Assembly: GCA_964304625.1 (NCBI GenBank)
Contig: OZ199840.1
Coordinates: forward strand, 8,705,487-8,769,486
Reading direction: 5' to 3'
From: Kudoa neothunni
Lineage: Eukaryota > Animalia > Cnidaria
Length of the DNA: 64,000 nucleotides
A model generated the notes under the pieces. That model saw only the letters and a program-made list of their open reading frames with translations. It was not told where the DNA came from and did no database searches. Numbering within the stretch: position 1 is the first letter of the stretch; every line of letters begins with the position of its first letter. Shown here in pieces: positions 5,446-54,182 of this stretch. The position numbers were made by a program, and so were the translations under genes.

Positions 5446-8400
5446 ATGAAAATAGCTGGATTATTCTACCTTGTCTTAGGTATTTTCCCGAATCAATTTT
5501 AATGCTGATGTATGTTTAGGTGTTTTAATATCAGATAGAGCCAATGCTGATCAAAGTTCAGATCCTCAACCTGCAACTGGAGCCTCAACGAAAACGCTGA
5601 AATACCAGATTGGGAAAGGTTCAGATACTAATCCAGAAAAAATTAAACTTAATCTTGAAGGTTCTGGTTACGAAAGGGGCAAATTTTGCCGTATAATGCG
5701 GTCTAACGATGTAGAAATTGTAGAGGCTCATAGTTCTGGTAGCGCAACAGTAGCAGCAGCGTTTGCAAGCATCAAGAGCTGCAATGCTAATGACAGTAAT
5801 ATTCAAGATAATTGTGTTGTGGATTGTAACACTAATGATAATACAATCACCTATGATAACCTATCACCAATAACCAAATACATATTTGTCTACGTAGGCA
5901 GTGAAATAAATACTGTTAAGACCCAGGTTAATGGAGCGGGATCAAAAGTATTCGGATACTCAATACGTAATTCCATTTTATTTAATATAAAGATAAATTA
6001 AATTTAGCATTATTGGCTAATCCACAAATTACCGTGTCTCTGGACTCAGGAACTACCGATAAAAATAAACTGAAATTGGTTGCGAAAACATGTGCGCCTG
6101 TAGATTGTCCTATTTATTATAAGGATATTAAATATGAAGATGGTACCAAGGGGACAACTTGTTATGCCGAAAATTCAAAAAATACAGTTGATTTCGATTT
6201 ATTGTTACCGCATTATGAAGTAAGGTGCGGAAATTATCCCAGTTTCTTTTACAATATGCCAAATCAATATATGAAGAAAACTATAGCTATTTATCAGCCT
6301 CAGTTTTATGCTGTTGCAAAAACTGGGGACAAAGTGGGAATTAAATTCACCAACTCCCCATCCTCTGAAATATGTCTATTCAGTCTTAAAGATGGTAAGG
6401 AAACGACAGACACTCAAAAATATACTTCAGTTTGTGGTGGAACCGACAAGAGTTGTTACGCTCCTTGTAAATACGTCGAACTCGATGGCATTAAGGATAA
6501 AAACATCTACGATATTTTGATCCAGACTAGACACCACGACATAAAATCTTCTGGTAATTTTGATGGTTATAAGAAAAAGAAATATGGTAATGCTTATATT
6601 AATGAGCATTTTTTATTATTTTCTTTAGCGATTACTGAACCAGTTGGAGGATTGCTTTCTACTTATACTGAGGTAGGTGTTACGTTTGATGGTACCGTAT
6701 TTAAAGACAAAACTAATCCAGCATTCGCTACGTGTACTCTTAAACACTATTTTGCGGACAAAATCAAATCAGAAACTCCAACAATGTCAAAGTGCACCAC
6801 TGAAACCTCTGCTAGCGATAACTGCAATAATAATTGCGCCACAAAATTGGTGCTTCAAAAACTTAAACCGGGAAAAGCTTACATGATTGAGATCACATTT
6901 ACGGGTACTGATGTTCCAAGTAGTTTACAAGAGCAAATATTCATAAGAACAAGTAAATCTATATATTTATTTTAGAAAATAATGAATTATAAGAAAATGG
7001 AGCTGATAAAAAATATGGAACTACTGATCCTACAAAAACAGACACAACAATCTCTATTACAGCAGTTGGCGGAACTTCACCTGAAGACAAGAAAACTGAA
7101 CCCACCTGCGAGTATTTGGTAAGCCCGGCTGGATTGGAGACTTTTTATCCCGCCAAGTGCAATGGATACACCTCGTGTAGAGGAATTTGTAGAGATCAAG
7201 TAACGATAGAAGATCTTGAGCCAAACACACCATATGACATCAGAGTGATCGCACATAACGAATACGATACAAAAAATTACAAAGATATACGAACAGGTTA
7301 TTGAAATTATAATTTATTCTTTAAATTTTTAATAGAATTAACAACATTAACGATAACACACATGATCGCATTGGATGGTTTGTCATTGAGGGCACGATTA
7401 AATTCCGTAGATCCAAGTGCAACTTGTAGTTATATCGTACAAAAGAAGAATGGAAACGATTACACAGACTTCTACACATGCCCAGTGGTGCCGAAAGTAA
7501 CGACACCAGTTATTACCCCAGTAGCACCAACATCCCCTTCGGCTGCTCTTTCCAGTTTACGTTCTGCAGATCTCAACATAGCCAGAATTACTGTGCCAAT
7601 AGTAGAAGATGATAGTCTAACGCCAGCGGCGAAATCATCAGTTCCGGATAATTCAGATACACAGCATGCTGGTGCCGCTGACGGCACAAACACATGTTCG
7701 TCAAATCCCCTTTGCAGTTCCATAAAATTTGCCGAGTATGAAGCAGCGAATACATACAGAATCTTAGTCACAGCTATCGGAAAATCGACACAAAAAGAGC
7801 ATATCATAGAAACAAGTATTACAATTAATGCTTCAATTAATGTCACTATTAAGAATTTCTTAAAAGAAACTTACATTAGGTGCACCGAGAGTAAACCCAA
7901 CTGATTCCTCAAAATTGATATCAGTCGTCATTACACGCGATGGGAACAGTTTCATTGTAACTACAACATATCCAGCCAGTATGAACGATAACTCAAAATG
8001 CAAATGGGAGTTACGTAACAGTAGTGTCAAATCAAATGCGATAGTAAAATCATGCATGGGAAGAAATTTCGACAGGTGCACTGCCTTTAAGACCTGTAAA
8101 GAATTCAAAATAAATGATTTGCCTGATGGAAATAACTATTATTTGACTGTTTACAGTGCCCAAGATGAGACGATTTTTGGCGGTGCTGACATACAACAAG
8201 GTATATTATTTGGTCACAACATAATTTAATGCTATATATCGTAGGATCAAAGAGTAGTTCAGGGTGGGCTTAGTAAAATTCTTTTTTTAATTTAATATTT
8301 TTTAGGATTAATACCAAACTTATGTAAACATTTTTAATTTCCGATATTTGAACTAACCGTTTTATAGAATCATTATTGCGTGTGTTGCTGTGGTTGTGGT

Positions 8401-8446
8401 CGCAGCGATAGTTGGAATCGTGGTACTGAAGAAGAAAAGAGATTAA
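5446..8446 (+). CDS. Family copy 1 (divergent): type I membrane protein with Cys-rich FN3-like ectodomain, 10 exons, 867 aa
   Basis: Hand-spliced exons 5446-5479, 5520-5966, 6008-6586, 6629-6952, 6994-7296, 7336-7815, 7880-8200, 8245-8263, 8306-8323, 8368-8446 total 2604 nt in one open frame, all introns GT-AG. N-terminus MKIAGLFYLVLGVLISDRANA is signal-like. FN3-type motifs LEPNTPYDIRVIAHN, LKPGKAYMIEIT, LPDGNNYYLTVYS. C-terminus LIIIIACVAVVVVAAIVGIVVLKKKRD*. Confidence 0.85.
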
Positions 8447-8848: not shown

Positions 8849-11090
8849 CAGTGGTTCTTAACCTAGGTTCGGTGAAAAAATTCCAAATTTTAGATCCAAT
8901 CTAGGATTATTATTCTTTAATTTTAATATTTTAAATAAACCTTCTATTGGTTGTATTTATAACCCTAATTAGAAGCTCTATTAAAAAGATAATAGTGATA
9001 AATTAAAAAATTATTGATAATTTAATTTCAATTATTATTTGAGCGTTTGAAATCCATTTCGATTTATCTGAATAGTACAATCGCGTGCAACGAGTTACAG
9101 TGTTTACCGCGCGGTGGTGTTATTTGCTTGCTAATTTTGTGAGGGTTACTAGAAATAAATATTAGCTCGTTGAATGTTTAACAAAAAAAGAAAGTGGTCA
9201 AATGATTTTTTACAGTTCGGGTTTACCTATGTTACGGAACTTAATGGTATTCAACGACCTCTTTGCATGATATGCAACTCGAAATTAAATAATTCTAGTT
9301 TGATACCAGCAAAACTAAAGGATGATTTCACAAGTGTCTATGGAGACTCTGCATATAGGAATATGACTCTTTCTGAACTTGAAGCAAAGAGAGCAAGATA
9401 TGTTGAAAGAACTACGTTGCAAAATTTTGGATTTGTTAATGTCGATAAGCCTATCTTAACAGTAACGTATGTAGTTTCATATCTCATTGGCAAACAAGGT
9501 AAACCTCACAATATTGAGGAAACGATCGTTAGACCTGATGCGTTGAAGATGGCAAATATTTTATTTTGAAGTATCGCAGAAAAAAAATTAGCACAAATTC
9601 CTTTGTCAAATGATACCATCAACAAATGAATTGATGATATGAGTAAAAACATTCTGGATCAATTAATTTCTGATCTAATTTCAAGTAAAGCAATGTTTAG
9701 TATACAATTCAACGAAACTAGTGGTATCTCAAACCTAAGTCAACTGGTTTCATTTGTTGGATATTTGAAAATTTGTGTGATAGTTGAAGATTTTCTTTTT
9801 TGCAAACCTTTAACAAAAACTAACAAGACAGTGGATGTTAAGAAGTTGTCGATGAGTTTTTCAAAGACAATGGACTTTCATGGAATATGGTTTCTTTTAT
9901 TTGCATTGATGTTGCCCCAGTTATACTGGGACGTAACTCTGTTTTTTGTGCTCTTGTGAAAGCAGATGCACGTCACATTATTGTTACGCATTGCATTTTA
10001 CATAGATATGCATTAGCAACAATGAATGTGCCTCCAAGGCTGAGAGAAGTGCGTGCTGAAAATCGTTATCGATTGTGTAAATTTTGTGAGACGTAGTGCT
10101 TTGAATCATGGAACCCTCAAATATTTGTGCAACGAAATGGATTCTGAAATACTTTTGTTTTACTCAAATGTGAGGTGGCTGTCTCGAGGAAAAATATTAA
10201 ACCGCGTTTTTACCCTGCGAAAGGAAATAGGTATATTTTTGCTGGAGTGTAACCATTGCCATGCTCAATGTTTCAATAATTTGGAATTTACTCTTCTTTT
10301 GGCATACATGGTTGATATTTTCGATTCCATAAATTGTTTGAACCTGCAGATGCAAGCAAATGGAGTCAACATCATTGAGGCAGAAGAGTATCTTAGAGCA
10401 TTCCAAATTAAATTATCTTTTTACAAATGAAGAATAATGGTCGACAATTATGCAAACTTTCCACTTTTAAAATATATTTGTAATATTAATGGCGGCGATA
10501 ATAACGAATCGATCATTTTACCTTTTGAATTAAAGGAAATAATTGCTGCACATTTAGAAGAACTTTCTAACTCACTCGATGGCTATTTCCCTTCTAAAAA
10601 TTCATTCCTCGACTGGGTGAGGCAGCTATTTAGCTTCGATAATTCAGCTGAGGATGCCAATAATAAATACCTTGATGAGCTAATCGAATTTCAACACAAC
10701 AAATTCAAAAACAACTTTTCGAAAAAGTTTTACCATCAATCTTTTGGATAAATCAAATTGAGAAATATCCTACAATTTCGAAGAAAGCTTTGGAAGTTTT
10801 TATTCCCTTCGTAACAACTTACCTTTGCGAACAATCATTTTCAATATTGGTCACCATACAAGGTAAGCTAAGAAATAAGCTTTTCTGTGAAAGAGATATA
10901 CGAATCGCTCAATCCAACATTTTGCCTCGTATTACGGAATTGGTTGCAAAAAAAAGAACAAAAATCGCACTAATTAGCTTTACATTAATTTGATTTTTAC
11001 ATTTTGTAAGTTTTATGATGTGCCAAATACTGATTAAATTATAATTCATTTTATTTAAATTTTAAAAGATTTTTTGTTTGGGGGTTCGTC
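8849..11090 (+). mobile_element. Degenerate hAT (Buster/Charlie, SCAND3/ZBED8-like) transposon, 3' TIR missing
   Basis: 5' end CAGTGGTTCTTAACCT. Broken ORFs 9174-10993 carry FGFT..PLCMIC, KPHNIEETIVRP, THCILHRYAL, VRWLSRGKIL and PFVTTYLCEQSFS motifs, with stops and frameshifts. Confidence 0.85.
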
Positions 11091-11092
11091 GA

Positions 11093-11390: not shown

Positions 11391-11402
11391 AATAATGTGT
11401 AT

Positions 11403-14267: not shown

Positions 14268-17198
14268 CTAGTCATTTTTCTTTTTTCCGATGAAAAATGC
14301 GATTCCCCCCTATCAAAAGTACCACTCCTGCAACAGCTGATACGATTATTCTATCTATAAATTAAACAACTCAAATAACAAAAATTAATACATCATTTTC
14401 ATGTTTGACCTAAAATTAAAATTTCGTTATATTGTTATATACAATAATATAGTAGTAAAATCACTTTGCACTACTTTTTTCACCTAAAGAGAATAACAAT
14501 AAAAAAATAATTTTTAATTTATTTAATACCTTGATTTATTGCAGCGGTTCCGTAATATGTCGGATCAGACTCCAAGTATACGATTAAATGATAATTGTTT
14601 GATTCTGGCAAGTTATCAATGGTGAAACTTGCACATTTTGGAAACTTGGTGCATTTAGAATTCCGCACCATACATGATCTCACAATTAATTGTGATTTTG
14701 CACTTGTATTTTTCAATTCCCATTTACATTTTGACTTTTCGTTCACTTTTGTCGAATGATGAGTTTCCACTGTGAATGTAGTTCCATCTCGTGTTATTGA
14801 AACGTCTAATACTTTATTGGTGTCTGTTGGATTTTCTTTAGGTTTATCTAATCGTTGATTAATATGGATAAATTTGAAATTAAAATTTTTACTTGAAGGG
14901 ATATCAATTGTTTGTTGTGTAGATTTTCCTCTAGCAGTCACCAAAACTCTGTATTCATGGTTTGGATCGTAGTCGGTGTTGAATACAATAGATTTGCATG
15001 ATGGCATATTTTGACATGTCTTTGAAGTGATATCATTAGTTTGAGCAGTATTTGCTGTTGCTGTGCCACCTGCTCTAGCTATACTTACTATCTCTGATTT
15101 TGGTGTAATTTCAGAACTTTGAGAAGGTTGTGAAGTCTGTGAGGATGGATCGGGAAATGTAAGAGTAGGTGGATTAGTTGAGGCAGGGGCAGGGCACACA
15201 AATATCGATTCATAATCATTACCCTTTTTAATTTTTACATCGTATTCACACAGGGCTGGAGTTTTTGTCGACAATCGTGCATTCAATTCGAATCCTTCCA
15301 TATTAAATCTATGAGTAATTGATAGTGTATCCAACTCTAATGAAATTTTATTTAATAAAAATGAAACAAAATTAACTTACGAGTTTCAACTCCACTATAA
15401 ATATGTTCCGCATAATCTTTATGAGCAACTACTTTAATGTCATATTGAACACCAGGTTCTAGACCAATGATTTTTTTAGTATCCTTACAGAAGCCTCTAC
15501 ATGGAATGCTGTCTTCGCATGACGCAGGATAGAAATTATCTTTTCCTGTCAAACTTATATGATATTCACATGTCGGTTCTGTTTCTTTATCATCGCGTAC
15601 CGTACCATCTACAGCTTTAAGGGATGCATCAGATGCTGTTGTTGTTGGAGTTGTAGCTAAATAAGTCTTCCCACTGCCGTTTTCTTAATAAATATTAATA
15701 TTGTCTGAAACATTAAATATATTTACTCGTTCTGTAAAATATCTTTTCTTTAAAATTTGTAGGGTTGGTAATTCCGGTTGCAGTTACTTCAATAATATAT
15801 GCCCTACCAGCATTAAGACCTTTTACGACTAATTCTGAGCCATCTTGCTTGCAATCTCCGTCAGTGGAGGAGGGACTTGTACTACTACCAGAAACACAAG
15901 TAGTAGTAGTCGACGTAGTCGGTTTAATACTGTCAGCGGCATAGTGGGTGAGAGTAGGGGTTCCATTATTCTCTTTTAAAAGGTTTGAATTAAATGTAAC
16001 ACCAAAATTTGTATGAGATGACAATAATTCTTTGGTTTGCTCAGTAATGGCTGAAAAAATTAAAAAATGTTTAAACTTTTTCGTTAAACAATTACCGTAT
16101 TTATTTTGGATATAACCGTCATACGTTTTGTTAGAATGCATTGATAGCTTGTGATGCCTCGTTTGGATTATAACACTGTAAACCGATTTTGCTGCAGATA
16201 CTGTTAAAGTAACATTTTTACAGGGGGCATAGCATTCACCGTTGCTGTTACCACACTTTGATTCATATGCATCATTAACTGCAGTAGTCTCAGCATTTCT
16301 AACACGAAAGACACAAATTTCATGGGATGGGTTATTAGTAAATTTCAAAGTGATTTTTTTGTCATCTTCAGTATTTTTAGTAACATAAAATTGTGGCTTG
16401 TAAATTTCAATGTTGTCTCTCATGTACACATTAGGCAAGTTATAAAAAAAGCTTGGATAATTTTCACATCTCACTTCATAATGAGGAATTAGGAGATCGA
16501 AATCAACCGTATTTGCTTCGTTTTCAGTGATACAATTAGTGTTGGCCGTTCCTTCATTGTATTTCGTATCCTTATAGTGGATTGGACAGGCCACTGGTGT
16601 GTATGTTTTTGCACACAATTTGAGCTTTTTTGAATTGTCAGTGGAAATTAAAATTTGTGGATTTACAAGCAATGCTAAATTTAAATTAAATGTTAATAAA
16701 ATTTAATATCACAGTTACGTATTACTAAACCAAACACTTTGCCACCCTTAATTTGAGTTTGAGTATTAACAGCCCCTGCGTTAATTCCAGCAAAAATGTA
16801 AATGAATTGAGTTCTGGGAGAAAGTACGTTAAAACCTATCTTTATATCATCCCCAGCACACTTTCTAACACATTTATTTTTTGATGCTTCATCAGTATCG
16901 TTATTAGGACATCCATCTATTTCACCAAGCACAGCAGGAGGGGCCCCATTAGACTTCATGATACGGCAGGTTTTACCTTCTGTAGTATATGTACTTCCTT
17001 CTAAAATAAGTTGGACCTTGAATATATTTGCAGTAGTATCTTTCACAATTTGGTATTTCACAGTTTCGGCCAAAGAAGTTTGAACTGGGACTACTTTCTC
17101 ACAAAGTTTTTGTTTAATGAGAACTATAAATAATTTTTTAAATATGAGGAACCAAATAAATTACTTAATATGTAAAATACGTTTAGAACATTCATCAT
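14268..17198 (-). CDS. Family copy 2; intact except one extra base in the TM exon
   Basis: 34-nt exon 1 at 17165-17198 (MMNVLNVFYIL|ILIKQKLC), same 10-exon layout as copy 1. C6 at 14305-14310 versus C5 in the other four - copies shifts the end to IGGNRIFHRKKEK*. Confidence 0.8.
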
Positions 17199-19460: not shown

Positions 19461-19655
19461 AATTAAATTTATTTAATTAGTATTAACAACTTATGAATTA
19501 CTTTATTATTTGATTCATGTTTACTATTAAAAATAGCCAAAATGTTATATATTTTCTGTAATTTTAATACAAAAACCAAATATAACTATTATTAATCTAT
19601 TATTTTAAATCTTAAAGTTTTTATTAATAAATATTTTGATTTAATCTACTATATA

Positions 19656-27162: not shown

Positions 27163-30098
27163 CTAATCATTTTTCTTTTTTCCGATGAAGAATGCGATTC
27201 CCCCTATCAAAAGTACCACTCCTGCCACAGTTGATACGATTATTCTATCTATAAATTAAACAACTCAAATAACAAAAATTAATACATCATTTTCATGTTT
27301 GACCTAAAATTAAAATTTCGTTATATTTTTATATACAATAATTTAGTAGTAAAATTACTTTGCACTACTTTTTTCACCTAAAGAAAATAATACAAAAATA
27401 ATTTTTAATTTATTTAATACCTTGATTTATTGCAGCAGTTCCGTAATATGTCGGATCAGACTCCAAGTATACGATTAAGTGATAATTGTTTGATTCTGGC
27501 AAATTATCAATGGTGAAACTTGCACATTTGGGAAATTTGGTGCATTTAGAATTCCGCGCCATGCATGATCTCACAATTAATTGTGATTTTGCACTTGTAT
27601 TTTTTAGTTCCCATTTACATTTTGACTGTTCGTTCACTTTTGTCGAATGGTGAGTTTCCACTGTGAATGTAGTTCCATCTCGTGTTATTGAAACGTCTAA
27701 TACTTTACTAGTGTCTGTTGGATTTTCTTTAGGTTTATCTAATCATTGATTAATATGGATAAATTTGAAATTAAAATTTTTACTTGAAGGGATATCAATT
27801 GTTTGTTGTGTAGATTTTCCTCTAGCAGTCACCAAAACTCTGTATTCATGGTTTGGATCGTAGTCGGTGTTGAATATAATAGATCTGCATGATGGCATAT
27901 TTTGACATATCTTTGAAGTGTTATCATTAGTTTGAGCAAGTATTTTCTGTTGTTGTACCACCTGCTCTAGCTATACTTACTATCTCTGATTTTGATTTAA
28001 TTGCAGAACTTTGAGAAGGTTGTGAAGTCTGTGAGGATGGATCGGGAAGTGTAAGAGTAGGTGGATTAGTTGAGGCAGGGGCAGGGCACACGAATATCGA
28101 CTCATAATCATTACCCTTTTTAATTTTTACATCGTATTCACACAAGGCTGGAGTTTTTGTCGATAATCGTGCATTCAATTCGAATCCTTCCATATTAAAT
28201 CTATGAGTAATTGATAGTGTATCCAACTCTAATGAAATTTGATCTAATAAAAATAAAACAAAATTAACTTACGAGTTTCAACTCCATTATAAATATGTTC
28301 CGCATAATCTTTATGAGCAACTACTTTAATGTCATATTGAACACCAGGTTCTAGACCAATGATTTTTTTAGTATCCTTACAAAAGCCTCTACATGGTTTG
28401 CTGTCTTCGCATGACGCAGGATAAAAACTGTCTTTTCCAGACAAACTTATATGATATTCACATGTTGGTTCTATTGTTTTATCATTGGTTACCGTACCAT
28501 CAACAGCTTTAAGGGATGCATCAGATGCTGTTGTTGTTGGAGTTGTAGCTGAATAAGTCTTCCCACTGCCGTTTTCTTAATAAATATTAATATTGTCTGA
28601 AACATTAAATATATTTACTCGTTCTGTAAAATATTTTTTCCTTAAAGCCACTTGGATCGGCAACTCCTGTTGCAGCTACTTCAATAATATATGCCCTTCC
28701 AGCATCAAGACCTTTTACGACTAACTTGGAGCCGTCTTTTTTGCAATTTTCACCACCACCACCACCACCATCATCACTAGTTATCGTACTACCATCAGCA
28801 CAAGTAGTAGTTGTTGCAGTTGGTTCAATACTGTCAGCAACATAATGAGTGAGAGTAGGGGTTCCGCTGCTCTCTTTTAAAAGTCCTGAGTTAAATGTAA
28901 CACCAACAGCTGTGTAAGCTGATAATAATCCATCTTCTGTTTCAGTGATAGCTAAAAAAAATTTAACGGAATTCACCCTCTTCGTTACACAAATACCGTA
29001 TTTATTTTGAATATAACCGTCATACGTTTTATTAGAATGCATTGATAGCTTGTGATACCTAGTTTGAATTACAACGCTGTAGACCGATTTTGCTGCAGAT
29101 ACGGTCAAAGTGACATTTTTACAGGGAGCATAGCATTCATCTTCACTGTTACCACATTTTGATTCATATGCTTCATTGGCTGCGTTAGTCGCAGCATCTT
29201 TAACACGAAATACACAAATCTCATGTGATGGGCTCTATTAGTAAATTTTAAAGTGATTTTGTTATCTTCAGTATTTTTAGAAACATAAAATTGTGGTTTG
29301 TAAATTTCAATGGTGCTTTTCATGTACTCATTAGGCATGTTATAAAAAAAACTTGGATATTTTTGGCATCTCACTTCATAATGTGGAATAAGGATATCAT
29401 AATCAACTGTATTAGCTTGATTTTCAGTGTCACAGTTATCAGCTTGCGTTCCATCGTTGTATTTCATATCTTTATAGTGGATTGGACAGACCACTGGTGT
29501 GCACGTTTTTGCACCCAATTTGAGCTTTTTTGAATTGTCAGTAGAAATAGAAATTTGTGGGTCAATAATTAATGCTAAATTTAAATCGATTATTAATAAA
29601 ATTTAAAATCACAGTTACGTATTGCTAAACCAAACACCTTGCCACCCTTCGTTTGAGATTGTGTATTAACGGCCTCTGCGTTAGCTCCAGCAAAAATGTA
29701 AATATATTGGGTTCTGGGAGACAACGTATTAAAAGCTATAATTATATCTTCTCCAGCGCAAGTCCTGACGCACATATCGTTAGATTTCTCCGTGACGACA
29801 TTCGGACAGGGGTTGATTTCGGTAAATGTAACAGCGTTAACGTCTCTATTGGACTTTCTGATGCGACACGTTTTACCATTTGTAGTATAAGTGCTTCCAG
29901 TTAAAATTAGTTGAACCTTTAATTGATTTGCACCAGTGTCTTTCACAATTTGATATTTCACAGTTTCACGTGGCGCTGAAGGAACTTGAGCTATCTCCTC
30001 GCAAAATTTTTTTTTGATGAGAACTATAAAATATTTCATAAATTAAAAGCCACACAAATATTACAAAATATGTAAAGTATGTTAAAAATTATTTTCAT
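27163..30098 (-). CDS. Family copy 3; two apparent frameshifts
   Basis: Exon 1 at 30065-30098 (MKIIFNILYIF|FLIKKKFC); TM exon ends IGKKKND*. Indels at ~29231-29237 and 27938-27939 relative to paralogues. Confidence 0.75.
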
Positions 30099-39786: not shown

Positions 39787-42705
39787 CTAGTCATTTTTCT
39801 TTTTTCCGATGAAGAATGCGATTCCCCCTATCAAAAGTACCACTCCTGCAACAGCTGATACGATTATTCTATCTATAAATTAAACAACTCAAATAACAAA
39901 AATTAATACATCATTTTCATGTTTGACCTAAAATCAAAATTTCGTTATATTGTTATATACAATAATTTGGTAGTAAAATTACTTTGCACTACTTTTTTCA
40001 CCTAAAGAAAATAATACAAAAATAATTTTTAATTTATTTAATACCTTGATTTATTGCAGCAGTTCCGTAATATGTCGGATCAGACTCCAAGTATACGATT
40101 AAATGATAATTGTTTGATTCTGGCAAGTTATCAATGGTGAAACTTGCACATTTTGGAAACTTGGTGCATTTAGAATTCCGCGCCATGCATGATCTCACAA
40201 TTAATTGTGATTTTGCACTTGTATTTTTTAGTTCCCATTTACATTTTGACTGTTCGTTCACTTTTGTCGAATGGTGAGTTTCCACTGTGAATGTAGTTCC
40301 ATCTCGTGTTATTGAAACGTCTAATACTTTATTAGTGTCTGTTGGATTTTCTTTAGGTTTATCTAATCGTTGATTAATACAGATAAATTTGAAACTAAAA
40401 TTTTTACTTGAAGGGATATCAATTGTTTGTTGTGTAGACTTTCCTGTGGCAGTCACCAAAACTCTGTATTCATAGTTTGGGTCGTAGTCGGTGTTGAATA
40501 TAATAGATTTGCATGATGGCATATTTTGACATATCTTTGAAGTGTTATCATTAGTTTGAGCAGTATTTTCTGTTGTTGTACCACCTGCTCTAGCTATACT
40601 TACTATCTCTGATTTTGATTTAATTGCAGAACTTTGAGAAGGTTGTGAAGTCTGTGAGGATGGATCGGGAAGTGTAAGAGTAGGTGGATTAGTTGAGACA
40701 GGGGCAGGGCACACAAATATCGATTCATAATCATTACCCTTTTTAATTTTTACATCGTATTCACACAGGGCTGGAGTTTTTGTCGATAATCGTGCATTCA
40801 ATTCGAATCCTTCCATATTAAATCTATGAGTAATTGATAGTGTAGCCAGTTCTAATAAAATTTAATGTAACAAAAATAAAACAAAATTAGTTTACTAGTT
40901 TCAACTGCCTTGTAAATGTGTTCTGCATAATCTTTATGAGCAACCACTTTGATGTCATATTGAACACCAGGTTCTAGACCAATGATCTTTTTAGTATCCT
41001 TACAAAAGCCCCTACATGGATTGCTGTCGTCGCATGAAGCAGGATAGAAATTATCTTTTCCTGTCAAACTTATATGATATTCACATGTTGGTTCTGTTGT
41101 TTTATCATTGGTTACCGTACCATCAACAGTTTTAAGGGAGGCATCGGATGCTGTTGTTGTTGGAGTTGTATCTAAATAAGTCTTCCCACTCTCGTTTTCT
41201 TAGTAGATATTAATATTGTCTGAAACATTAAATATATTTACTTGTTCTATAAAATATTTTTTCTTTAAAATTTGTAGGGTTGGTGATTCCTGTTGCAGTT
41301 ACTTCAATAATATATGCCCTACCAGCATTAAGACCTTTTACGACTAATTCTGAGCCATTTTTCTTGCAGTTTCCATCACTACCATCAGTTATACTACTAC
41401 TAGAAGCACAAGTAGTAGTAGTCGATGCAGTCGGTTTAATACTGTCAGCGGCATAATGAGTGAGAGTAGGGGTTCCGCTGCTCTCTTTTAAAAGTCCTGA
41501 GTTAAATGTAACACCAATAGCTGTGTAAGCTGATAATAGTCCTTCTGTTGGTTCAGTGATAGCTAAAAAAATTTAAAAATGTTTGTACTTCTTCGTTACA
41601 CAATTACCGTATTTATTTTGAATATAACCGTCATACGTTTTATTAGAATGCATTGCTAGCTTGTGATGCCTTGTTTGGATTATAACACTATAAACTGATT
41701 TTGGTGCAGACACCGTCAAAGTGACATTTTTACAGGGGGCATAGCATTCACCGTTGCTGTTACCACACTTTGATTCATATGCATCATTAACTGCAGTAGT
41801 CTCAGCATTTCTAAGACGAAACACACAGATCTCGTGAGATGGGTTGTTAGTAAATTTTAAAGTGATTTTGTTATCTTCAGTATTTTTAGAAACATAAAAT
41901 TGTGGCTTGTAAATTTCAATGCTGTTTTTCATGTATTCATTAGGCATGTTATAAAAAAAGCTTGGATAATTTTGGCATCTCACTTCGTAATGTGGAATTA
42001 GGAGATCGAAATCAACCGTATTAGCTTGGTTTTCATTGATGCAATCAGTGTTGGCCGTTCCTTCATTGTATTTCATATCTTTATAGTGGATTGGGCAGTT
42101 GACTGATGTACATGTTTTTGTGCTTAACTTTAATTTGTTTGAGGTACCCTCTGTTGAAATAGAAATTTGTGGATTTACAAGTAATGCTAAATAAAATATT
42201 TTTATTTAATCGAATTAACTATACAGTTACGTGCTACTAAACCAAATACTTTTCCACCATGTAATTGATTAGCTGTATTAACAGCCCCTGCGTTGTCTCC
42301 AGCAAAAATGTAAATGTAATGTGTTCTGGGAGAAAATAAATTAAAGTCTATTTTTATATTATCCCCAGCACAAACTCTAACACATTTATTGTTCGCGTCC
42401 CCTTCCGTTATGCCGCTCGGACAAGAGGTAATTTCGTCAAATGCAAGTGCATTATTGGCTACATTTGACTTCATGATGCGGCAGGTTTTACCTTCAGTAG
42501 TATATGTACTTCCAGTTAAAATTAGTTGAACTTTGGATTGATTTCCATCAGTGTCTTTCACGATCTGATATTTCACTCGTTCTGTTGGAGCAATGGGAAC
42601 GTTTCCGTCACAAAACGTTTGGTTAATAATAACTTAAAAAGTTTATCAGCGAATAAAAAATATTAAATTACTAAATATGGAAAAAATATTAATAATAAAC
42701 AACAT
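39787..42705 (-). CDS. Family copy 4; apparently fully intact
   Basis: Exon 1 at 42672-42705 (MLFIINIFSIF|IIINQTFC); no frameshift found. C-terminus QGEKSSAKSNMKMIIIVSAVAGVVLLIGGIAFFIGKKKND*. Confidence 0.85.
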
Positions 42706-45853: not shown

Positions 45854-48780
45854 CTAGTCATTTTTCTTTTTTCCGATGAAGAATGCGATTCCCCCTATCA
45901 AAAGTACCACTCCTGCAACAGCTGATACGATTATTCTATCTATAAATTAAACAACTCAAATAACAAAAATTAATACATCATTTTCATGTTTGACCTAAAA
46001 TCAAAATTTCGTTATATTGTTATATACAATAATTTGGTAGTAAAATTACTTTGCACTACTTTTTTCACCTAAAGAAAATAATACAAAAATAATTTTTTAA
46101 TTTATTTAATACCTTGATTTATTGCAGCAGTTCCGTAATATGTCGGATCAGACTCCAAGTATACGATTAAGTGATAATTGTTTGATTCTGGCAAATTATC
46201 AATGGTGAATCTTGCACATTTTGGAAACTTGGTGCATTTAGAATTCCGCGCCATGCATGATCTCACAATTAATTGTGATTTTGCACTTGTATTTTTTAGT
46301 TCCCATTTACATTTTGACTGTTCGTTCACTTTTGTCGAATGATGAGTTTCCACTGTGAATGTAGTTCCATCTCGTGTTATTGAAACGTCTAATACTTTAT
46401 TGGTGTCTGTTGGATTTTCTTTAGGTTTATCTAATCATTGATTAATACAGATAAATTTGAAACTAAAATTTTTACTTGAAGGGATATCAATTGTTTGTTG
46501 TGTAGATTTTCCTGTGGCAGTCACCAAAACTCTGTATTCATGGTTTGGATCGTAGTCGGTGTTGAATACAATAGATTTGCATGATGGCATATTTTGGCAT
46601 GTCTTTGAAGTGATATCATTAGTTTGAGCAGTATTTTCTGTTGTTGTACCACCTGCTCTAGCTATTTTTAGTGCGTCAAATCTTGACTTAATTAGAGAAT
46701 TTTGAGAAGGTTGTGAAGTCTGTGAGGATGGATCGGGAAGTGTAAGAGTAGGTGGATTAGTTGAGGCAGGGGCAGGACACATGAATATCGACTCATAATC
46801 ATTACCCTTTTTAATTCTTACATCGTACTCACACACAGCTGGTGTGTTTGTCGATAATCGTGCATTCAATTCGAATCCTTCCATATTAAATCTATGAGTA
46901 ATTGATAGTGTATCCAATTCTAACGAAATTTAGTATTAACAAGATAAAATAATATTGATTTACTAGTTTCAACTGCCTTATAAATATGATCCGCATAATC
47001 TTTATGAGCAACTACTTTAATGTCATATTGAACACCAGGTTCTAGACCAACGATTTTTTTAGTATCCTTACAAAAGCCTCTACATGGAATGCTGTCTTCG
47101 CATGACGCAGGATAGAAATTATCTTTTCCTGTCAAACTTATATGATATTCACATGTTGGTTCTGTTGTTTTATCATCGCGTACCGTACCATCTACAGCTT
47201 TAAGGGATGCATCAGATGCTGTTGTTGTTGGATCTGTATCTAAATAAGTCTTTTGAGCGCCACTTTCTTAATAAATATTAATGATTTTAATATTATTTTG
47301 TATATTCACTCGTTCTGTAAAATATTTTTTCTTTAAAGTTCTGTGGATCAGTAACTGTTGACATTGCAACTTCAAACATGTAAGCCCTTCCACTATCAAG
47401 ACCGGTTACCACTAATTTAATACCTTCTGTTTTGCAAGTGCTTCCATTTCCAGACGTTGTGCCACTACCAGCAGCACAGTTAGTAGTACTTGGTGCGTCT
47501 GGCGTAAAAGTGTCGGCAGGATAATGAGTGAGAGTAGTGGTTCCGGCAGTAACTTTAAAGGGCGAAGAATCAAACTTGACACCTACATTAGTAAACTCTG
47601 ATAATAATCCCTCGGTTGGTTCAGTAATTGCTAAAAGAATTGATCATATTTATGTAAGTGATTTCATTCGTTATTACCGTATTTATTTTGAGTATACCCC
47701 TCATAATTTTTATCAGATTTTATCGTTAAATCGTGATGTCTTGTTTGGATTACGACACTGTAAACCGATTTTTCTGCTTTGACAGTTAATGTAACATTTG
47801 CGCAAGGGGCGTAGCAATCACCATTTTGGTTACCACAATTTGACTCATATGCGTCACTTGAACCAGTTTGTGTAGCATCTTTAATACGAAACACACAGAT
47901 TTCGTGAGATGGATTATTAGTAAATTTTAAAGTAACTTTTTTAGTATCTGCAGAGTTTTTCGTGATTATAAAATTGTGGTTTGTAAATTTCAATTCCGCT
48001 TTTCATGTATTCATTGGGCATGTTATAAAAAAAGCTTGGATAATTTTGACATTTCATTTCATAATGAGGAATAAGAAGATCGAAATCGAGGATATTCGCT
48101 TGACCGTCAGTGTTACAACTATCAGCATTTGTACCTGCTGCGTACTGCATGGCTTTGTAGTGAATGGGACAGTCTACAGGAGTGAATGTTTTGACACATA
48201 ATTTAAGTTTTTTTTGAGGTGTCAAAGGAAACAGCAAATTTCGGATTAACAAGCAATGCTAAAGTTAATGTAATTATTTATTTCATTAATAATAAGTTAC
48301 GTGTTGAAAAACCAAACATTTTTCCTCCTGTTAATTCGTTCGCATCTTTTTCGGCTCCGTCCTTGGTCCCAGAAAATATGTAAACGTACGAAGTTCTGGG
48401 AGAAAGAGCATTAAAATCCAACTTTAAATCGTTTCCAGCACAAACTCTAACACATTTATCGCCGGAACGGGCAGGTTCTCTTCCGGTAGGGCAATTACTA
48501 ATTTCATTTAAAGTAAGTGCATCGCCCGCTTTATCAGATTTCCTGATGCGACACATCTTATTGGCGGTAGTATAAATACTCCCACTTAAAACAAGTTGGA
48601 GTTTGAATGGATTATCACCCGTATCTTTCACAATCTGATAATTCACTATTTCCGTTGGAATGGTAGGAACATTTTCATTGGAGAAGGTTTGGTCGATGAA
48701 AACTATAAAAAAACAATATGGAAAACATAAAAAAATCTAAAATTACTTAACGTGGAAATAATATGAAAAACAAGCGACAT
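45854..48780 (-). CDS. Family copy 5; two apparent +1 frameshifts; most diverged N-terminal half among the - copies
   Basis: Exon 1 at 48747-48780 (MSLVFHIISTL|IFIDQTFS). Extra bases at 48208-48215 (T8) and ~47966. TM/tail as in copy 4. Confidence 0.75.
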
Positions 48781-51266: not shown

Positions 51267-54182
51267 TTAGTCATTTTTCTTTTTTCCGATGAAGAATGCG
51301 ATTCCCCCTATCAAAAGTACCACTCCTGCAACAGCTGATACGATTATTCTATCTATAAATTAAACAACTCAAATAACAAAAATTAATACATCATTTTCAT
51401 GTTTGACCTAAAATCAAAATTTCGTTATATTGTTTATATACAATAATTTAGTAGTAAAATTACTTTGCACTACTTTTTTCACCTAAAGAAAATAATACAA
51501 AAATAATTTTTAATTTATTTAATACCTTGATTTATTGCAGCAGTTCCGTAATATGTCGGATCAGACTCCAAGTATACGATTAAGTGATAATTGTTTGATT
51601 CTGGCAAATTATCAATGGTGAATCTTGCACATTTGGAAACTTGGTGCATTTAGAATTCCGCGCCATGCATGATCTCACAATTAATTGTGATTTTGCACTT
51701 GTATTTTTTAGTTCCCATTTACATTTTGACTGTTCGTTCACTTTTGTCGAATGATGAGTTTCCACTGTGAATGTAGTTCCATCTCGTGTTATTGAAACGT
51801 CTAATACTTTATTAGTGTCTGTTGGATTTTCTTTAGGCTTATCTAATCGTTGATTAATACAGATAAATTTGAAATTAAAATTTTTACTTGAAGGGATATC
51901 AATTGTTTGTTGTGTAGATTTTCCTGTGGCAGTCACCAAAACTCTGTATTCATGGTTTGGGTCGTAGTCGGTGTTGAATACAATAGATTTGCATGATGGC
52001 ATATTTTGACATGTCTTTGAAGTGTTATCATTAGTTTGAGCAGTATTTGCTGTTGTTGTGTCTCCTGCTCTAGCTATACTTACTACCTCTGATTTTGATC
52101 TAATTGCAGCATTTTGAGGAATTTGAGGAGAATTTTGAGAAGACTCGGGAGGACGTAGGAGTAGGTGGATTAGTTGAGACAGGGGCAGGGCACACAAATA
52201 TCGATTCATAATCATTACCCTTTTTAATTTTTACATCGTATTCACACAGGGCTGGAGTTTTTTGTTGCATTCAATTCGAATCCTTCCATATTAAATCTAT
52301 GAGTAATTGATAGTGTATCCAACTCTAATGAAATTTGATCTAATAAAAATAAAACAAAATTAACTTACGAGTTTCAACTCCATTATAAATATGTTCCGCA
52401 TAATCTTTATGAGCAACTACTTTAATGTCATATTGAACACTAGGTTCTAGACCAATGATTTTTTTTAGTATCCTTACAAAAGCCCCTACATGGATTGCTG
52501 TCTTCGCATGACGCAGGATAAAAACTGTCTTTTCCAGACAAACTTATATGATATTCACATGTTGGTTCCGTTGCTTTAACATTGCTTACCGCACCATCAA
52601 CAGCTTTAAGGGATGCATCAGATGCTGTTGTTGTTGGAGTTGTAGCCAAGTAAGTGTTTTGAGCGCCATTTCTTAATAAATATTAATATTGTCTGAAACA
52701 TTAAATATATTTACTTGTTCTATAGAATATTTTTTCTTTAAAATCTGCTGGGTTTGTGATTCCGATTTCAGCCACTTCAATAATATATGCCCTTCCAGCA
52801 TCAAGACCTTTTACGACTAACTTTGAGCCGTCTTTTTTGCAATTTCCACTACTACCAGTTATCGTACTACCGTCAGCACAAGTAGTAGTTGTTGCAGTTG
52901 GTTCAATACTGTCAGCAACGTAATGAGTGAGAGTAGGGGTTCCACTGTTCTCTTTTAAAAGTCCTGAGTTAAATGTAACACCAATAGCTGTGTAAGCTGA
53001 TAATAGTCCTTCTGTTGGTTCAGTAATCGCTAAATAAATTCATTATGTTTATACTTTTTATTTCGCTTTTTATTACAATATTTATTTTGGATATAGCCGT
53101 CATAGGTTTTACCAGTTTGTTCTGTTAAGATATGATGCCTTGTTTGGATTACAACGCTGTAGACCAATTTTGCTGCAGATACAGTCAAAGTAACATTTTT
53201 ACAGGGGGCATAGCAGTTCACCGTCACTATTACCACACTTCGATTCGTATGCATCATTAGCTGCGGTGGTCGCAGCATCTTTAACTCGAAAGACACAAAT
53301 TTCATGGGATGGGTTATTAGTAAATTTTAAAGTGATTTTGTTATCTCCAGTATTTTTAGAAACATAAAATTGTGGCTTGTAAATTTCAATGGTGCTTTTC
53401 ATGTATTCATTAGGCATGTTATAAAAAAAGCTTGGATAATTTTGACACCTCATTTCATAATGTGGAATTAAGAGATCAAAATCAACTGTATTAGCTTGGT
53501 TTTCAGTGTCACAGTTACCAACTTGTGTTCCATCGTTATATTTCATATCTTTATAGTGGATTGGACAGACCACTGGTGTGCATGTTTTTGCACCCAATTT
53601 GAGCTTTTTTTGAATTGTCAGTAGAAATAGAAATTTGTGGGTCAATAATTAATGCTAAATTTAAATTGATTATTAATAAAATTTAAAATCAAAGTTACGT
53701 ATTGCTAAACCAAACACCTTGCCACCCTTCGTTTGAGATTGTGTATTAACGGCCTCTGCGTTAGCTCCAGCAAAAATGTAAATATATTGGGTTCTGGGAG
53801 ACAACGTATCAAAAGCTATTTTTATATCGTCCCCAGCACATGTTCTAACACATTTGTTGCTGGATTCCCCTCCAGTGTTTCCCTCCGGACATGCGTTGAT
53901 TTCGGCAAATGCAATAGCTTCGTTATTTATATTAGATTTCCTGATGCGGACACGTCTTGCCTTTTGCTGTATAAGTACTTCCACCTAAGACGAGTTGAAC
54001 CTTTAATGGATCTGCAGCAGTATCTTTCACAATTTGATATTTCACAGTCTCAGTTGGGGCAGCAGGAACTGGGGATACTTCCTCACAAAGTTTTTCTTTA
54101 ATAAGAACTATAATAAATTTTATAAGTATGAAGAACCAAATAAATTACTCAATATGTAAAATACGTTTAGAACTATCATCAT
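51267..54182 (-). CDS. Family copy 6; multiple apparent frameshifts (pseudogene or consensus errors)
   Basis: Exon 1 at 54149-54182 (MMIVLNVFYIL). Indels near 53948, 53605-53611, 53216, 52459-52466, 52258-52266, ~52150 and 51632. TM/tail intact. Confidence 0.7.

What the first reader, a model, noticed from the sequence alone, without database searches (positions are those of the whole stretch)
5446..54182. Six-gene array of variant FN3-like type I membrane proteins: candidate variable surface-antigen/receptor system
Seen: six paralogues share an identical 10-exon plan (34-nt signal exon, six large ectodomain exons, 19-nt and 18-nt microexons, 79-82-nt TM exon) with conserved cysteines and variable intervening sequence. 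Known: the L-x-P-x-x-x-Y-x-I-x-V-x-A pattern is typical of FN3 strands E-F, and a variable Cys-rich ectodomain on an invariant TM with a 5-residue tail is the layout of Giardia VSPs. Inference: a lineage-specific family diversified for host interaction, immune evasion or recognition. I do not recognise it as a named family, and no signalling domain is present.
Basis: partly seen in the sequence, partly recalled or inferred. Interest (0 to 1): 0.9.

Follow-up and report, generated by a model that had tools for sequence, protein, structure and literature searches.

The report
Giant FN3 surface-protein family in Kudoa
The six genes are real members of a family of at least about 240 undescribed genes in the tuna muscle parasite Kudoa neothunni; they encode single-pass membrane proteins built from fibronectin-type-III-like domains, and this may be the parasite's main variable surface coat, although no expression or localisation data exist yet.

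Summary
Six paralogues lie at 5446-54182, one on the + strand and five on the - strand. All share a 10-exon GT-AG plan: a 34-nt signal exon, six phase-1 ectodomain exons, 19-nt and 18-nt microexons, and a 79-83-nt TM exon.

As assembled, only two copies (g1, g4) are intact. g2 has a 1-nt run-length shift in the TM exon. g3, g5 and g6 carry 2, 2 and at least 6 frame-breaking indels. Contigs from the source sample disagree with the assembly at several g6 sites, and the assembly has only about 7x HiFi coverage, so pseudogene status is open.

The genome matches the published Kudoa neothunni assembly (40.2 Mb, 3 chromosomes, one (TAAACC)n end). The family is very large: at least 150 scored exon matches and 252 motif hits against 13 in the control, on all three chromosomes. 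No named homologue turned up among 1.84 billion proteins. The genome paper does not mention the family.

Folds and profiles confirm FN3/Ig-like beta-sandwiches. Distal exons are the most variable. The 3' halves are homogenised, and mosaic gene conversion is significant. Domain-average dN/dS is below 1. The Giardia VSP analogy fails on 3.3% Cys and no CxxC.

Function (variable host-facing coat versus parasite cell-cell recognition) is inferred, not shown. First-stage readers flagged arrays of this type in other windows of this genome.

The parts
5446..8446 (+). g1: intact 10-exon gene, 2604-nt CDS, 867 aa. Exons 5446-5479, 5520-5966, 6008-6586, 6629-6952, 6994-7296, 7336-7815, 7880-8200, 8245-8263, 8306-8323, 8368-8446.
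   Evidence: A local frame check gave GT-AG at all boundaries and no internal stop. The N-terminus is hydrophobic, and the gene ends in a TM segment plus KKKRD. g1 belongs to a different subfamily from g2-g6; its closest relatives lie at other loci (80% in exon 5).
14268..17198 (-). g2: 10-exon gene. Exons (5'->3' on the - strand) 17198-17165, 17123-16719, 16674-16096, 16050-15727, 15683-15381, 15336-14893, 14847-14530, 14483-14465, 14409-14392, 14350-14268. Open through exon 9. One extra G in the G-run at 14310 shifts the last 10 codons.
   Evidence: The TM exon is 83 nt against 82 in g3-g6.
27163..30098 (-). g3: 10-exon copy, frame-broken as assembled. It has a +2 indel at 29235-29236 in exon 3 and a +1 at 27939 in exon 6. 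Exons 30098-30065, 30023-29619, 29574-28997, 28951-28619, 28575-28273, 28228-27784, 27738-27421, 27377-27359, 27303-27286, 27244-27163.
   Evidence: There are 17 in-frame stops between the two indels. No read data were laid on this copy.
39787..42705 (-). g4: intact 10-exon gene, 2520-nt CDS, 839 aa. Exons 42705-42672, 42632-42231, 42186-41608, 41562-41242, 41198-40896, 40851-40408, 40362-40045, 40001-39983, 39927-39910, 39868-39787.
   Evidence: no internal stop; 27 Cys, 8 N-x-S/T sequons, a P/S/T-rich insert in exon 6, and a TM segment plus KKKND.
45854..48780 (-). g5: 10-exon copy, frame-broken as assembled. It has a +1 in the A-run at 48215 and a +1 at 47967, both in exon 3. Exons 48780-48747, 48702-48301, 48258-47678, 47630-47310, 47266-46964, 46919-46476, 46430-46113, 46068-46050, 45994-45977, 45935-45854.
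   Evidence: The laid contigs neither confirm nor contradict these two sites, because depth there is low and one site is at the stretch edge.
51267..54182 (-). g6: 10-exon copy with at least 6 frame-breaking indels as assembled: 53950, 53611, 53216, 52466, an 8-nt gap at 52262/3, 52153 and 51635. Exons 54182-54149, 54107-53699, 53654-53077, 53029-52715, 52671-52369, 52324-51888, 51842-51526, 51482-51464, 51407-51390, 51348-51267.
   Evidence: Contigs of runs X1-X4 differ from the assembly by one letter at 53216 and 52151 (both in g6-specific sequence), at 52459 and 51631/51637 (sequence shared with paralogues), and partly at 53605.
6010..6585 (+). Exon 3 of g1 (192 aa). It is the most conserved module of the family, has 8 conserved Cys, and is predicted as an Ig-like sandwich (residues 1-84) followed by an FN3-like sandwich (85-192).
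   Evidence: A3 alignment of 38 paralogues. AF2 model with pLDDT 75.9. Foldseek matches tandem FN3 cytokine-receptor modules at E about 3e-4. VIA-align Z is 6-7.8 per half.
6996..7295 (+). Exon 5 of g1 (100 aa): a single FN3 domain with 4 invariant Cys.
   Evidence: A4 alignment. AF2 model with pLDDT 81.3. All top Foldseek matches are FN3 domains, TM 0.5-0.6. Pfam fn3 is hit in 21 of 39 members. The profile hits titin FN3 at 5.8e-8.
5522..5965 (+). Exon 2 of g1 (148 aa): the membrane-distal, most variable module. Mean column identity is 39%, against 59% for exons 3, 5 and 7.
   Evidence: Alignments A6, A3, A4 and A5. There was no usable hit in the ESM Atlas feature search.

Best explanation
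The window holds six tandem members of a Kudoa-restricted multigene family of at least about 240 copies.

Each gene encodes a type I membrane protein with these parts:
- a signal peptide split by a 34-nt first exon;
- about seven disulfide-stapled FN3/Ig-like beta-sandwich domains, roughly one per phase-1 exon and two in exon 3;
- a Pro/Ser/Thr-rich insert in exon 6;
- a short stalk encoded by two microexons;
- one TM helix;
- a 2-5-residue basic tail that cannot signal.

Inferred mechanism: the proteins are carried through the secretory pathway to the parasite plasma membrane. There they form a rod-like, glycosylated host-facing coat or adhesin layer. The membrane-distal domains (exons 2 and 4) carry the variable binding or antigenic surface.

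The repertoire is generated and reshuffled by tandem duplication and by segmental gene conversion between paralogues. This keeps the proximal half nearly identical while leaving mosaic distal halves. The most likely role is variable host interaction or immune evasion.

Shown: gene structure, fold, family size, lineage restriction, mosaicism and purifying selection. Inferred: surface display, host-facing role, and any switching of expression.
For: Gene models and frames.

Fold:
- The exon 5 model matches FN3.
- The exon 3 model matches tandem FN3/Ig.
- Pfam fn3 is hit in 21 of 39 paralogues, and the PDB profile hits titin, fibronectin and NCAM FN3.

Topology: all six have hydrophobic N-termini, and 39 of 40 fetched paralogues have a TM segment and a stop; the tail is 2-5 aa and basic in 38 of them.

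Family size:
- The exon 3+4 profile gave 127 scored matches out of 567 candidates.
- Exon 5 gave 150 scored out of 474, nearly all stop-free.
- The motif pattern gave 252 hits against 13 in the control.
- 40 fetched paralogues are colinear for exons 2-7.

Restriction: only 18 unnamed fragments among 1.84 billion representatives. One of them is a colinear genomic fragment from another run.

Functional constraint: dN/dS is 0.08-0.65 per exon.

Variable tip, constant base: dS falls from 0.73 in exon 2 to 0.06-0.10 in exons 6-7. Column identity is 39% in exon 2 against 59% in exons 3, 5 and 7.

Mosaicism: the closest paralogue switches along the gene. Permutation p is below 0.001 for 9 of 10 pairs, and PHI-like p is 0.002.

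Organism: an obligate fish-muscle parasite.

Antigenic variation has been reported for other myxozoans, according to 10.64898/2026.02.11.705288.
Against: - There is no expression, proteomic or localisation evidence. No RNA run holds the locus, and the genome paper reports almost no parasite RNA reads.
- Domain-average dN/dS is below 1 everywhere, so positive selection is not demonstrated.
- Much of the tip-versus-base contrast comes from lower dS in the 3' half (homogenisation), not from faster protein change alone.
- From my own knowledge, Kudoa plasmodia live inside muscle fibres, where antibody pressure may be low.
- The family is only partly near chromosome ends. Most arrays, this one included, are internal.
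- Three of the six local copies are frame-broken as assembled.
Confidence: 0.45

Rival explanations
1. The proteins act in parasite-parasite recognition or adhesion. Homophilic or heterophilic binding between FN3/Ig ectodomains would hold together or sort the cell-in-cell stages and sporogonic cells, or tell self from non-self plasmodia. This would be functionally similar to the Alr family of the cnidarian Hydractinia.
For: - The organism is a cnidarian with cell-in-cell organisation.
- Multi-domain FN3/Ig type I proteins are classic adhesion molecules; the best fold matches are NCAM, Dscam, contactin and cytokine receptors.
- The family is clustered and includes broken copies, as in the Hydractinia ARC (PMC9546547).
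- Purifying selection with a variable distal domain fits specificity-determining tips.
- The S. molnari transcriptome authors speculate that IgSF genes serve non-self recognition.
Against: - More than 240 copies spread over three chromosomes far exceeds the 41 Alr genes, which sit in one complex.
- The tails are 2-5 residues, so no ITAM/ITIM or any other signalling is possible.
- No sequence similarity to any non-Kudoa protein was detected.
- Nothing tested here speaks to binding.
Confidence: 0.25
2. The copies are largely dead DNA: a decaying, repeat-like family, with this array mostly pseudogenes and no current protein function.
For: - g3, g5 and g6 are frame-broken as assembled, and g2 is shifted in the last exon.
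- About 5-9 of the 40 sampled paralogues show truncated exon matches.
- The family sits among transposon remnants.
- The published annotation lists only 5,316 proteins and 45.6% repeats.
Against: - dN/dS is 0.08-0.65 in every exon.
- Nearly all of the 150 scored exon 5 matches are stop-free.
- Splice sites, phases and microexons are conserved in all copies.
- Cysteines are invariant across 38-39 paralogues.
- g1 and g4 are fully open.
- Several g6 indels are contradicted by read-derived contigs.
Confidence: 0.07
3. The proteins stay in the ER or Golgi through a C-terminal dilysine (KKXX) retrieval signal. They would work inside the secretory pathway, not at the cell surface.
For: The tails KKKRD, KKKND and KKKN place Lys at positions -3 and -4 from the C-terminus in a type I protein. 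The KKXX rule itself is from my own knowledge.
Against: Across the 40 paralogues many tails do not fit KKXX or KXKXX (KNKG, KNKS, KNKN, KKNKS, KKK, KK, RKK). The feature conserved across the family is a short basic stop-transfer tail, not a positioned dilysine.
Confidence: 0.05
4. The array is an assembly artefact: haplotypes or collapsed repeats of one locus laid out as several genes.
For: - The assembly comes from about 7x HiFi of an infected fish and needed haplotig purging.
- The 3' halves are 97-100% identical.
- Contigs disagree with the assembly at single-letter indels.
Against: - The 5' halves differ by 15-35%, with copy-specific introns and flanks.
- The copies are separated by different transposon remnants, and one copy is on the other strand.
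- Unique intergenic contigs match at 100% (table 8).
- Summed contig depth in the shared 3' half is several-fold that of the unique spacer, as expected for several real copies. The tool warns that this depth is not a copy number.
- The same gene plan recurs at more than 100 other loci.
Confidence: 0.02

Closest known systems
Metazoan FN3-domain type I membrane proteins (NCAM, Dscam, contactin, cytokine-receptor ectodomains)
   Same: - Beta-sandwich FN3/Ig-like modules in tandem.
- Roughly one module per phase-1 exon.
- Signal peptide and a single TM helix.
- Both the fold and the weak sequence profile match these proteins.
   Different: - No detectable orthology.
- Each module carries extra conserved cysteines (4 in exon 5, 8 in exon 3).
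- There is no cytoplasmic domain, only a 2-5 aa tail.
- The family is amplified to at least about 240 copies in a 40-Mb genome.
Hydractinia allorecognition (Alr) gene family (PMC9546547)
   Same: - A cnidarian lineage.
- A clustered family of type I proteins whose Ig/FN3-like folds are hard to see by sequence.
- Invariant cysteines and pseudogenes in the cluster.
- A variable distal domain.
   Different: - Alr has 41 genes in one complex. This family is dispersed over three chromosomes.
[quoted passage not shown] Here the tails are 2-5 residues.
- No sequence link was found.
Giardia variant-specific surface proteins (VSPs), and the 'VSP-like' genes reported in Sphaerospora molnari (10.64898/2026.02.11.705288)
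   Same: - A large family in a parasite.
- Type I layout with a variable ectodomain, one TM helix and a very short basic tail.
   Different: VSPs are defined by more than 10% Cys, many CxxC motifs and a conserved tail motif. These proteins have 3.2-3.3% Cys and no CxxC. Their domains are FN3-like, and their tails differ between subfamilies.
Protozoan variant-antigen repertoires shaped by segmental gene conversion (for example trypanosome VSG and Plasmodium var/SICAvar; from my own knowledge)
   Same: - Hundreds of clustered paralogues.
- Mosaic sequence exchange between copies.
- Broken copies beside intact ones.
- A constant membrane-proximal part with a variable distal part.
   Different: - The organism is an animal (a cnidarian).
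- The genes are intron-rich.
- Most arrays are chromosome-internal.
- Nothing is known about expression control.
- Positive selection is not shown.

Membership tests
Fibronectin type III (FN3) domain superfamily | Seven-stranded beta-sandwich fold of about 90-100 residues | tested here: met
   The exon 5 AF2 model (pLDDT 81.3) has FN3 domains among its top-ranked Foldseek hits, with probability 1.0 and TM 0.5-0.6. Residues 85-192 of the exon 3 model align to FN3 domains at Z 6-6.7, and residues 1-84 align to Ig-like domains at Z 6.5-7.8. Exons 2, 4, 6 and 7 were not folded.
Fibronectin type III (FN3) domain superfamily | Sequence match to the fn3 profile (Pfam PF00041) at or above the curated cut-off | tested here: inconclusive
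   g1 exon 5 scores 21.3 bits against a cut-off of 25. Of 39 paralogues, 21 match at E up to 0.01, best 7.1e-6. The family profile hits titin FN3 at 5.8e-8, plus contactin, fibronectin, NCAM2 and Dscam. Other exons gave no Pfam hit. hhalign of exon 5 against exon 7 gave E 0.0085; against exon 2 or exon 3 it was not significant.
Giardia-type variant-specific surface proteins (VSP) | More than 10% cysteine with multiple CxxC motifs | tested here: not met
   g1 has 29 Cys in 867 aa (3.3%) and g4 has 27 in 839 aa (3.2%). Neither has a CxxC motif.
Giardia-type variant-specific surface proteins (VSP) | Conserved C-terminal tail motif after the TM helix | tested here: not met
   Tails differ by subfamily: KKKRD, KKKND, KKKN, KKKK, RKK, KNKG, KNKS and KKNKS. 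Only the shortness and the positive charge are conserved.
Hydractinia Alr family | [quoted passage not shown] | tested here: not met
   Tails are 2-5 aa. Copies lie on all three chromosomes. The search of 1.84 billion representatives gave only 18 short fragments from ENA and Logan assemblies, and the 10 looked up carry no name. The N-terminal half of exon 3 is Ig-like, but its set type was not determined.
Parasite variant surface antigen systems (functional class) | Large, clustered, lineage-specific repertoire | tested here: met
Parasite variant surface antigen systems (functional class) | Sequence exchange (gene conversion or recombination) between members | tested here: met
   The closest paralogue switches along the gene. 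The run-length permutation test gave p below 0.001 in 9 of 10 pairs, and the PHI-like test gave p 0.002. dS in exons 6-7 is low even between dispersed loci.
Parasite variant surface antigen systems (functional class) | Diversifying selection on exposed parts | tested here: not met
   Domain-average dN/dS is 0.36-0.60 in exon 2 and 0.31-0.47 in exon 4. Only 1-2 of 36 pairs exceed 1. Site-level tests were not run.
Parasite variant surface antigen systems (functional class) | Surface display and switching or exclusive expression | not testable with these tools
   No RNA run holds the locus. The genome paper reports very few parasite RNA reads.
KKXX dilysine ER-retrieval proteins | Lys at -3 and at -4 or -5 from the C-terminus, conserved in the family | tested here: not met
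   The motif is present in the KKKRD, KKKND and KKKN subfamilies and absent in KNKG, KNKS, KNKN, KKNKS, KKK, KK and RKK.

The most novel reading that the evidence does not exclude
Kudoa, an animal, runs a protozoan-style antigenic-variation system. A repertoire of several hundred FN3-coat genes would be continually reshuffled by segmental gene conversion, with broken copies serving as sequence donors. One or a few genes would be expressed per plasmodium to evade fish immunity. This would be the first such system described in a metazoan parasite, and it would have been missed by a hint-based annotation.
Probability: 0.15. Interest if true: 0.9.

Novelty: new variant of a known kind. Interest (0 to 1): 0.72.

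Why it matters
Myxozoans are economically important fish parasites, and almost nothing is known about their host interface. The published K. neothunni annotation has 5,316 proteins, was built from protein hints, and does not mention this family. A lineage-specific family of at least about 240 genes would therefore be one of the largest gene families in the genome. It would cover about 0.7 Mb and may currently be counted as repeats.

If expressed at the surface, the family gives:
- concrete candidates for the parasite coat;
- candidates for diagnostics or vaccines in aquaculture-relevant relatives;
- a way to test directly whether an animal parasite uses repertoire-based antigenic variation.

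It also shows FN3 modules with extra disulfides and microexon-encoded stalks evolving by gene conversion in a drastically reduced cnidarian genome.

Tried and rejected
- Nematode origin was rejected. There was no SL1 RNA family hit and no SL1 pattern, though the SL1 family search rang nowhere, controls included. There was no cuticle-collagen N domain either. The mitochondrial code has AGA at conserved Arg sites, so the organism is not a bilaterian.
- Rfam found nothing in the window.
- The ESM Atlas feature search with exon 2 gave no usable hit.
- Pfam gave no hit for exons 2, 3+4, 6 and 7 of g1. It also gave none for the ORFs at 9174-10751, 11799-12011 and 43640-44095, which I had taken from memory for hAT-like and piggyBac-like. 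That naming is unverified.
- hhalign of exon 5 against exon 2 and against exon 3 was not significant.
- The look-up of encoding contigs gave sample codes only, so the organisms behind the 18 fragment hits are unknown.
- The KKXX reading was considered and rejected.
- The haplotype mis-assembly reading was considered and rejected.
Searches and folds were done exon by exon, by reference. Exons were joined only inside local scripts, to test reading frames and count residues.

Full report
**1. What is in the sequence**

The window is about 30% GC. Open frames come in short runs separated by 39-64-nt GT-AG introns.

For the + strand copy (g1) I read the sequence and checked a 10-exon model in a local script. 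The exons are 34, 447, 579, 324, 303, 480, 321, 19, 18 and 79 nt. Every boundary is GT-AG. The CDS is 2604 nt and encodes 867 aa without an internal stop.

tblastn of the g1 exon peptides finds five more colinear copies on the - strand. A MAFFT alignment of those five, with projected exon boundaries, shows the same plan in all of them. Exon 1 is 34 nt. The six large exons are all in phase 1-1. The microexons are 19 and 18 nt. The TM exon is 82 nt, or 83 nt in g2.

**2. Where the observation needs correcting**

Only g1 and g4 (2520 nt, 839 aa) are open throughout.
- g2 has one extra G in a G-run of the TM exon (14310). This changes the last ten codons.
- g3 has a +2 indel at 29235-6 and a +1 at 27939.
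- g5 has a +1 at 48215 and a +1 at 47967.
- g6 has at least six frame-breaking indels, including an 8-nt gap.

I used the four runs that hold the locus; all four come from one sample and are kept as contigs.
- Contigs differ from the assembly by exactly one letter at 53216 and 52151. Both sites are in g6-specific sequence, and all the depth there carries the difference.
- Contigs also differ at 52459 and 51631/51637. That sequence is shared with paralogues, so these sites are uninformative.
- At the A-run at 53605 only part of the depth differs.
- Two contigs stop just before 53950.
- Non-coding places (48707, 51433, 52668) differ as well.
- The 8-nt gap and the g5 sites are neither contradicted nor confirmed.

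The assembly rests on about 7x HiFi coverage (see section 3). I therefore regard the pseudogene status of g3, g5 and g6 as unsettled: part real decay, part consensus or allelic difference.

**3. Whose genome this is**

The window is C3:8705487-8769486 of a 40,260,978-base assembly in four contigs of 17.15, 12.04 and 11.05 Mb plus 18,219 nt.

Evidence that it is a highly reduced non-bilaterian animal:
- It has nuclear-receptor zinc fingers, which from my own knowledge are confined to animals.
- Only 12 homeobox matches were found.
- It has no nematode cuticle collagen.
- The 18.2-kb contig is a mitochondrial genome with TGA as Trp and AGA at conserved Arg sites of COX1 and cytochrome b, and its COX1 is very divergent.

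A literature search led to Weber, Paulini and Blaxter 2025 (PMC12239612). Their Kudoa neothunni assembly was recovered from an infected yellowfin tuna. It has 40.2 Mb, three chromosome scaffolds plus a circular mitochondrion, N50 12.0 Mb, GC 30.41% and a median intron of 49 bp. It carries the telomere motif (TAAACC)n at one chromosome end only.

I found that repeat at exactly one contig end, C2:12039536-12040069. The match is effectively certain.

That paper reports k-mer coverage of about 7, an annotation from protein hints only (5,316 proteins), 45.6% repeats and almost no parasite RNA reads. It contains no occurrence of 'surface', 'fibronectin' or 'paralog'.

**4. Size and spread of the family**

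- A profile of exons 3+4 gives 127 scored matches out of 567 first-look candidates in the genome.
- g1 exon 5 gives 150 scored out of 474, almost all without stops. The weakest listed match is still at E 1e-16.
- A degenerate DNA pattern for the conserved Y-E-x-x-C-x-x-Y-P-x-F motif of exon 3 hits 252 places, against 13 for the reversed control.

The family therefore has at least about 240 members on all three chromosomes. The largest arrays are in the first 0.46 Mb of C3 and at 16.3-16.9 Mb of C1, but many arrays are internal, including this one. Two more copies lie within 10 kb upstream of the window.

I fetched forty paralogues from across the genome. Nearly all carry exons 2-7 in the same order and spacing. 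About 5-9 show truncated exon matches. In 39 of 40 a TM segment and a stop were found after exon 7; the tail is 2-5 basic residues in 38 of them.

First-stage readers flagged similar arrays in other windows of this genome. My genome-wide hits fall inside three of those intervals (s1-682510, s1-682511, s1-682508). The scan has thus met this family before on other DNA.

**5. What the protein is**

- All six N-termini are hydrophobic across the exon 1/2 junction.
- Cys content is 3.2-3.3%, with no CxxC motif.
- g4 has 8 N-x-S/T sequons.
- Exon 6 holds a Pro/Ser/Thr-rich insert.

Alignments of 33-39 paralogues show invariant or near-invariant cysteines: 8 in exon 3, 4 in exon 5 and 4 in exon 7.

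AlphaFold2 results:
- The exon 5 alignment gives a model with pLDDT 81.3. FN3 domains (NCAM2, fibronectin, monobodies, neogenin) dominate its Foldseek matches, at TM 0.5-0.6.
- The exon 3 alignment gives an all-beta model with pLDDT 75.9. It matches tandem FN3 modules of cytokine receptors. With VIA-align it splits into an Ig-like half (residues 1-84) and an FN3 half (85-192), at Z 6-7.8. By the tool's own note these Z values are middling.

Sequence evidence agrees:
- 21 of 39 exon 5 paralogues hit Pfam fn3 at E up to 0.01.
- The exon 5 profile hits titin FN3 at 5.8e-8, then contactin, fibronectin, NCAM2 and Dscam.
- Exon 5 and exon 7 profiles align in register, Cys pattern plus E-F motif, at E 0.0085.

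The ectodomain is therefore a rod of about seven disulfide-stapled beta-sandwiches.

Outside this genome, an exhaustive HMMER search of 1.84 billion representatives found only 18 short fragments. The ten I looked up are unnamed singletons from ENA and Logan assemblies. One is a 2.2-kb, 29%-GC contig with exons 2-6 colinear at 31-40% identity. The family therefore also occurs in other public samples, presumably in Kudoa relatives.

**6. How it evolves**

Among g2-g6 the 3' half, from exon 5 to the TM exon and including the introns, is 97-100% identical. The 5' half is 63-90% identical.

For the intact pair g2/g4, dS falls from 0.73 (exon 2) through 0.40, 0.38 and 0.24 to 0.06-0.10 (exons 6-7). 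dN/dS is 0.36, 0.15, 0.31, 0.25, 0.65 and 0.08.

In the g1 subfamily, which is spread over other loci and chromosomes, median dN/dS is 0.60, 0.29, 0.47, 0.32, 0.53 and 0.32. dS is again lowest in exons 6-7.

The closest paralogue changes along the gene at sub-exon scale. For example, g3 and g6 are 97-99% identical over alignment columns 611-830 but 71-83% just upstream. A run-length permutation test gives p below 0.001 for nine of ten pairs, and a PHI-like test gives p 0.002.

So the genes are under purifying selection, which means they code for something. The distal modules are the least constrained. Segmental gene conversion both homogenises the proximal half and produces mosaic distal halves. 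Positive selection is not shown at the domain level.

**7. Interpretation**

Shown:
- a very large, Kudoa-restricted, constrained family of type I multi-FN3 membrane proteins with no cytoplasmic domain;
- evolution by tandem duplication and gene conversion.

Inferred:
- delivery to the parasite plasma membrane;
- a host-facing coat or adhesin role, with the variable distal domains as the interacting or antigenic surface.

I put about 0.45 on this host-interface reading. Within it, true antigenic variation by switching expression is a minority possibility, about 0.15 overall.

The main rival is parasite cell-cell or self/non-self recognition, by analogy with the Hydractinia Alr family (about 0.25; PMC9546547). 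The copy number, the dispersal and the absence of any tail motif differ from Alr.

Minor rivals:
- A dead-repeat reading is contradicted by dN/dS, conserved splice sites and invariant cysteines.
- A KKXX ER-retention reading fails because the motif is not conserved across subfamilies.
- A mis-assembly reading fails on divergent 5' halves, distinct flanks and the same plan at more than 100 loci.

**8. Comparison with known families and novelty**

By fold the modules belong to the FN3/Ig superfamily. By sequence they are a new family.

Membership in Giardia-type VSPs fails on the two defining features I tested: Cys content with CxxC motifs, and the tail motif.

The S. molnari preprint (10.64898/2026.02.11.705288) reports VSP-like, RIFIN/STEVOR-like and ETRAMP-like genes in another myxozoan and cites evidence of antigenic variation there. 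Those are different, much smaller gene sets.

Four literature searches found no paper linking myxozoans or Kudoa to an FN3 family. I therefore rate this a new variant of a known kind: a parasite multigene surface-protein family built from a known fold.

**9. Procedure notes**

Searches and folds were done exon by exon, by reference. The joined protein was never sent to any search or fold tool; exons were joined only inside local scripts for frame checks. 

Noticed in passing
window 19884-21735 (+): Two adjacent ORFs (457 and 137 aa) of a transposon-type integrase lie between g2 and g3. Pfam hits are Integrase_H2C2, rve and the SCAND3-like zinc finger.
   Followed up: partly
window 23932-25883 (+): A run of ORFs carries ZSWIM3_N (2.4e-11) and a SWIM zinc finger, so this is a MULE/FAR1-like transposase remnant. 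It fits the MULE expansion reported for myxozoans in 10.64898/2026.02.11.705288.
   Followed up: partly
window 11799-12492 and 43306-44095 (+): Nearly identical ORF fragments lie about 1.8 kb downstream of g2 and of g5. g2 and g5 share one type of 3' flank, g3 and g4 share another, and g6 has its own. I took these ORFs for piggyBac-like from memory, but Pfam gave no hit.
   Followed up: partly
window 57115-57800 (+): A conserved housekeeping gene, translocon-associated protein subunit beta, is split by small introns. Pfam TRAP_beta scores 4.9e-11.
   Followed up: partly
window 61978-62252 (-): A weak DDE_3 (Tc1/mariner-type) transposase remnant, E 0.0025, below the Pfam cut-off.
   Followed up: no
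window 48707, 51433, 52668: There are single-letter indel disagreements between the assembly and all read-derived contigs at non-coding places. This suggests residual consensus errors or haplotype differences in this repeat-rich region of a roughly 7x assembly.
   Followed up: partly
G000:C4 (L003+L004), 18,219 nt: The mitochondrial genome has 44% GC against 30% in the nucleus. TGA reads as Trp, AGA reads as Arg, and COX1 is extremely divergent. ARAGORN found no tRNA in standard mode and only doubtful ones in -mt mode.
   Followed up: partly
G000:C2:12039536-12040069: The (TAAACC)n telomere repeat is present at only one of the six chromosome ends of the assembly. 'Subtelomeric' statements about the other ends are therefore uncertain.
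   Followed up: yes
G000:C1:10296485-10306767 (-): The only three nuclear-receptor zf-C4 matches in the genome sit in tandem within 10 kb, and two of them have identical scores. Only 12 homeobox matches were found in the whole genome.
   Followed up: no
L006 (G000:C3:302493-306492), TM exon: A paralogue at another locus shows the same kind of frame shift inside the TM exon as g2. The hydrophobic run breaks after ...IVG and continues in another frame.
   Followed up: no
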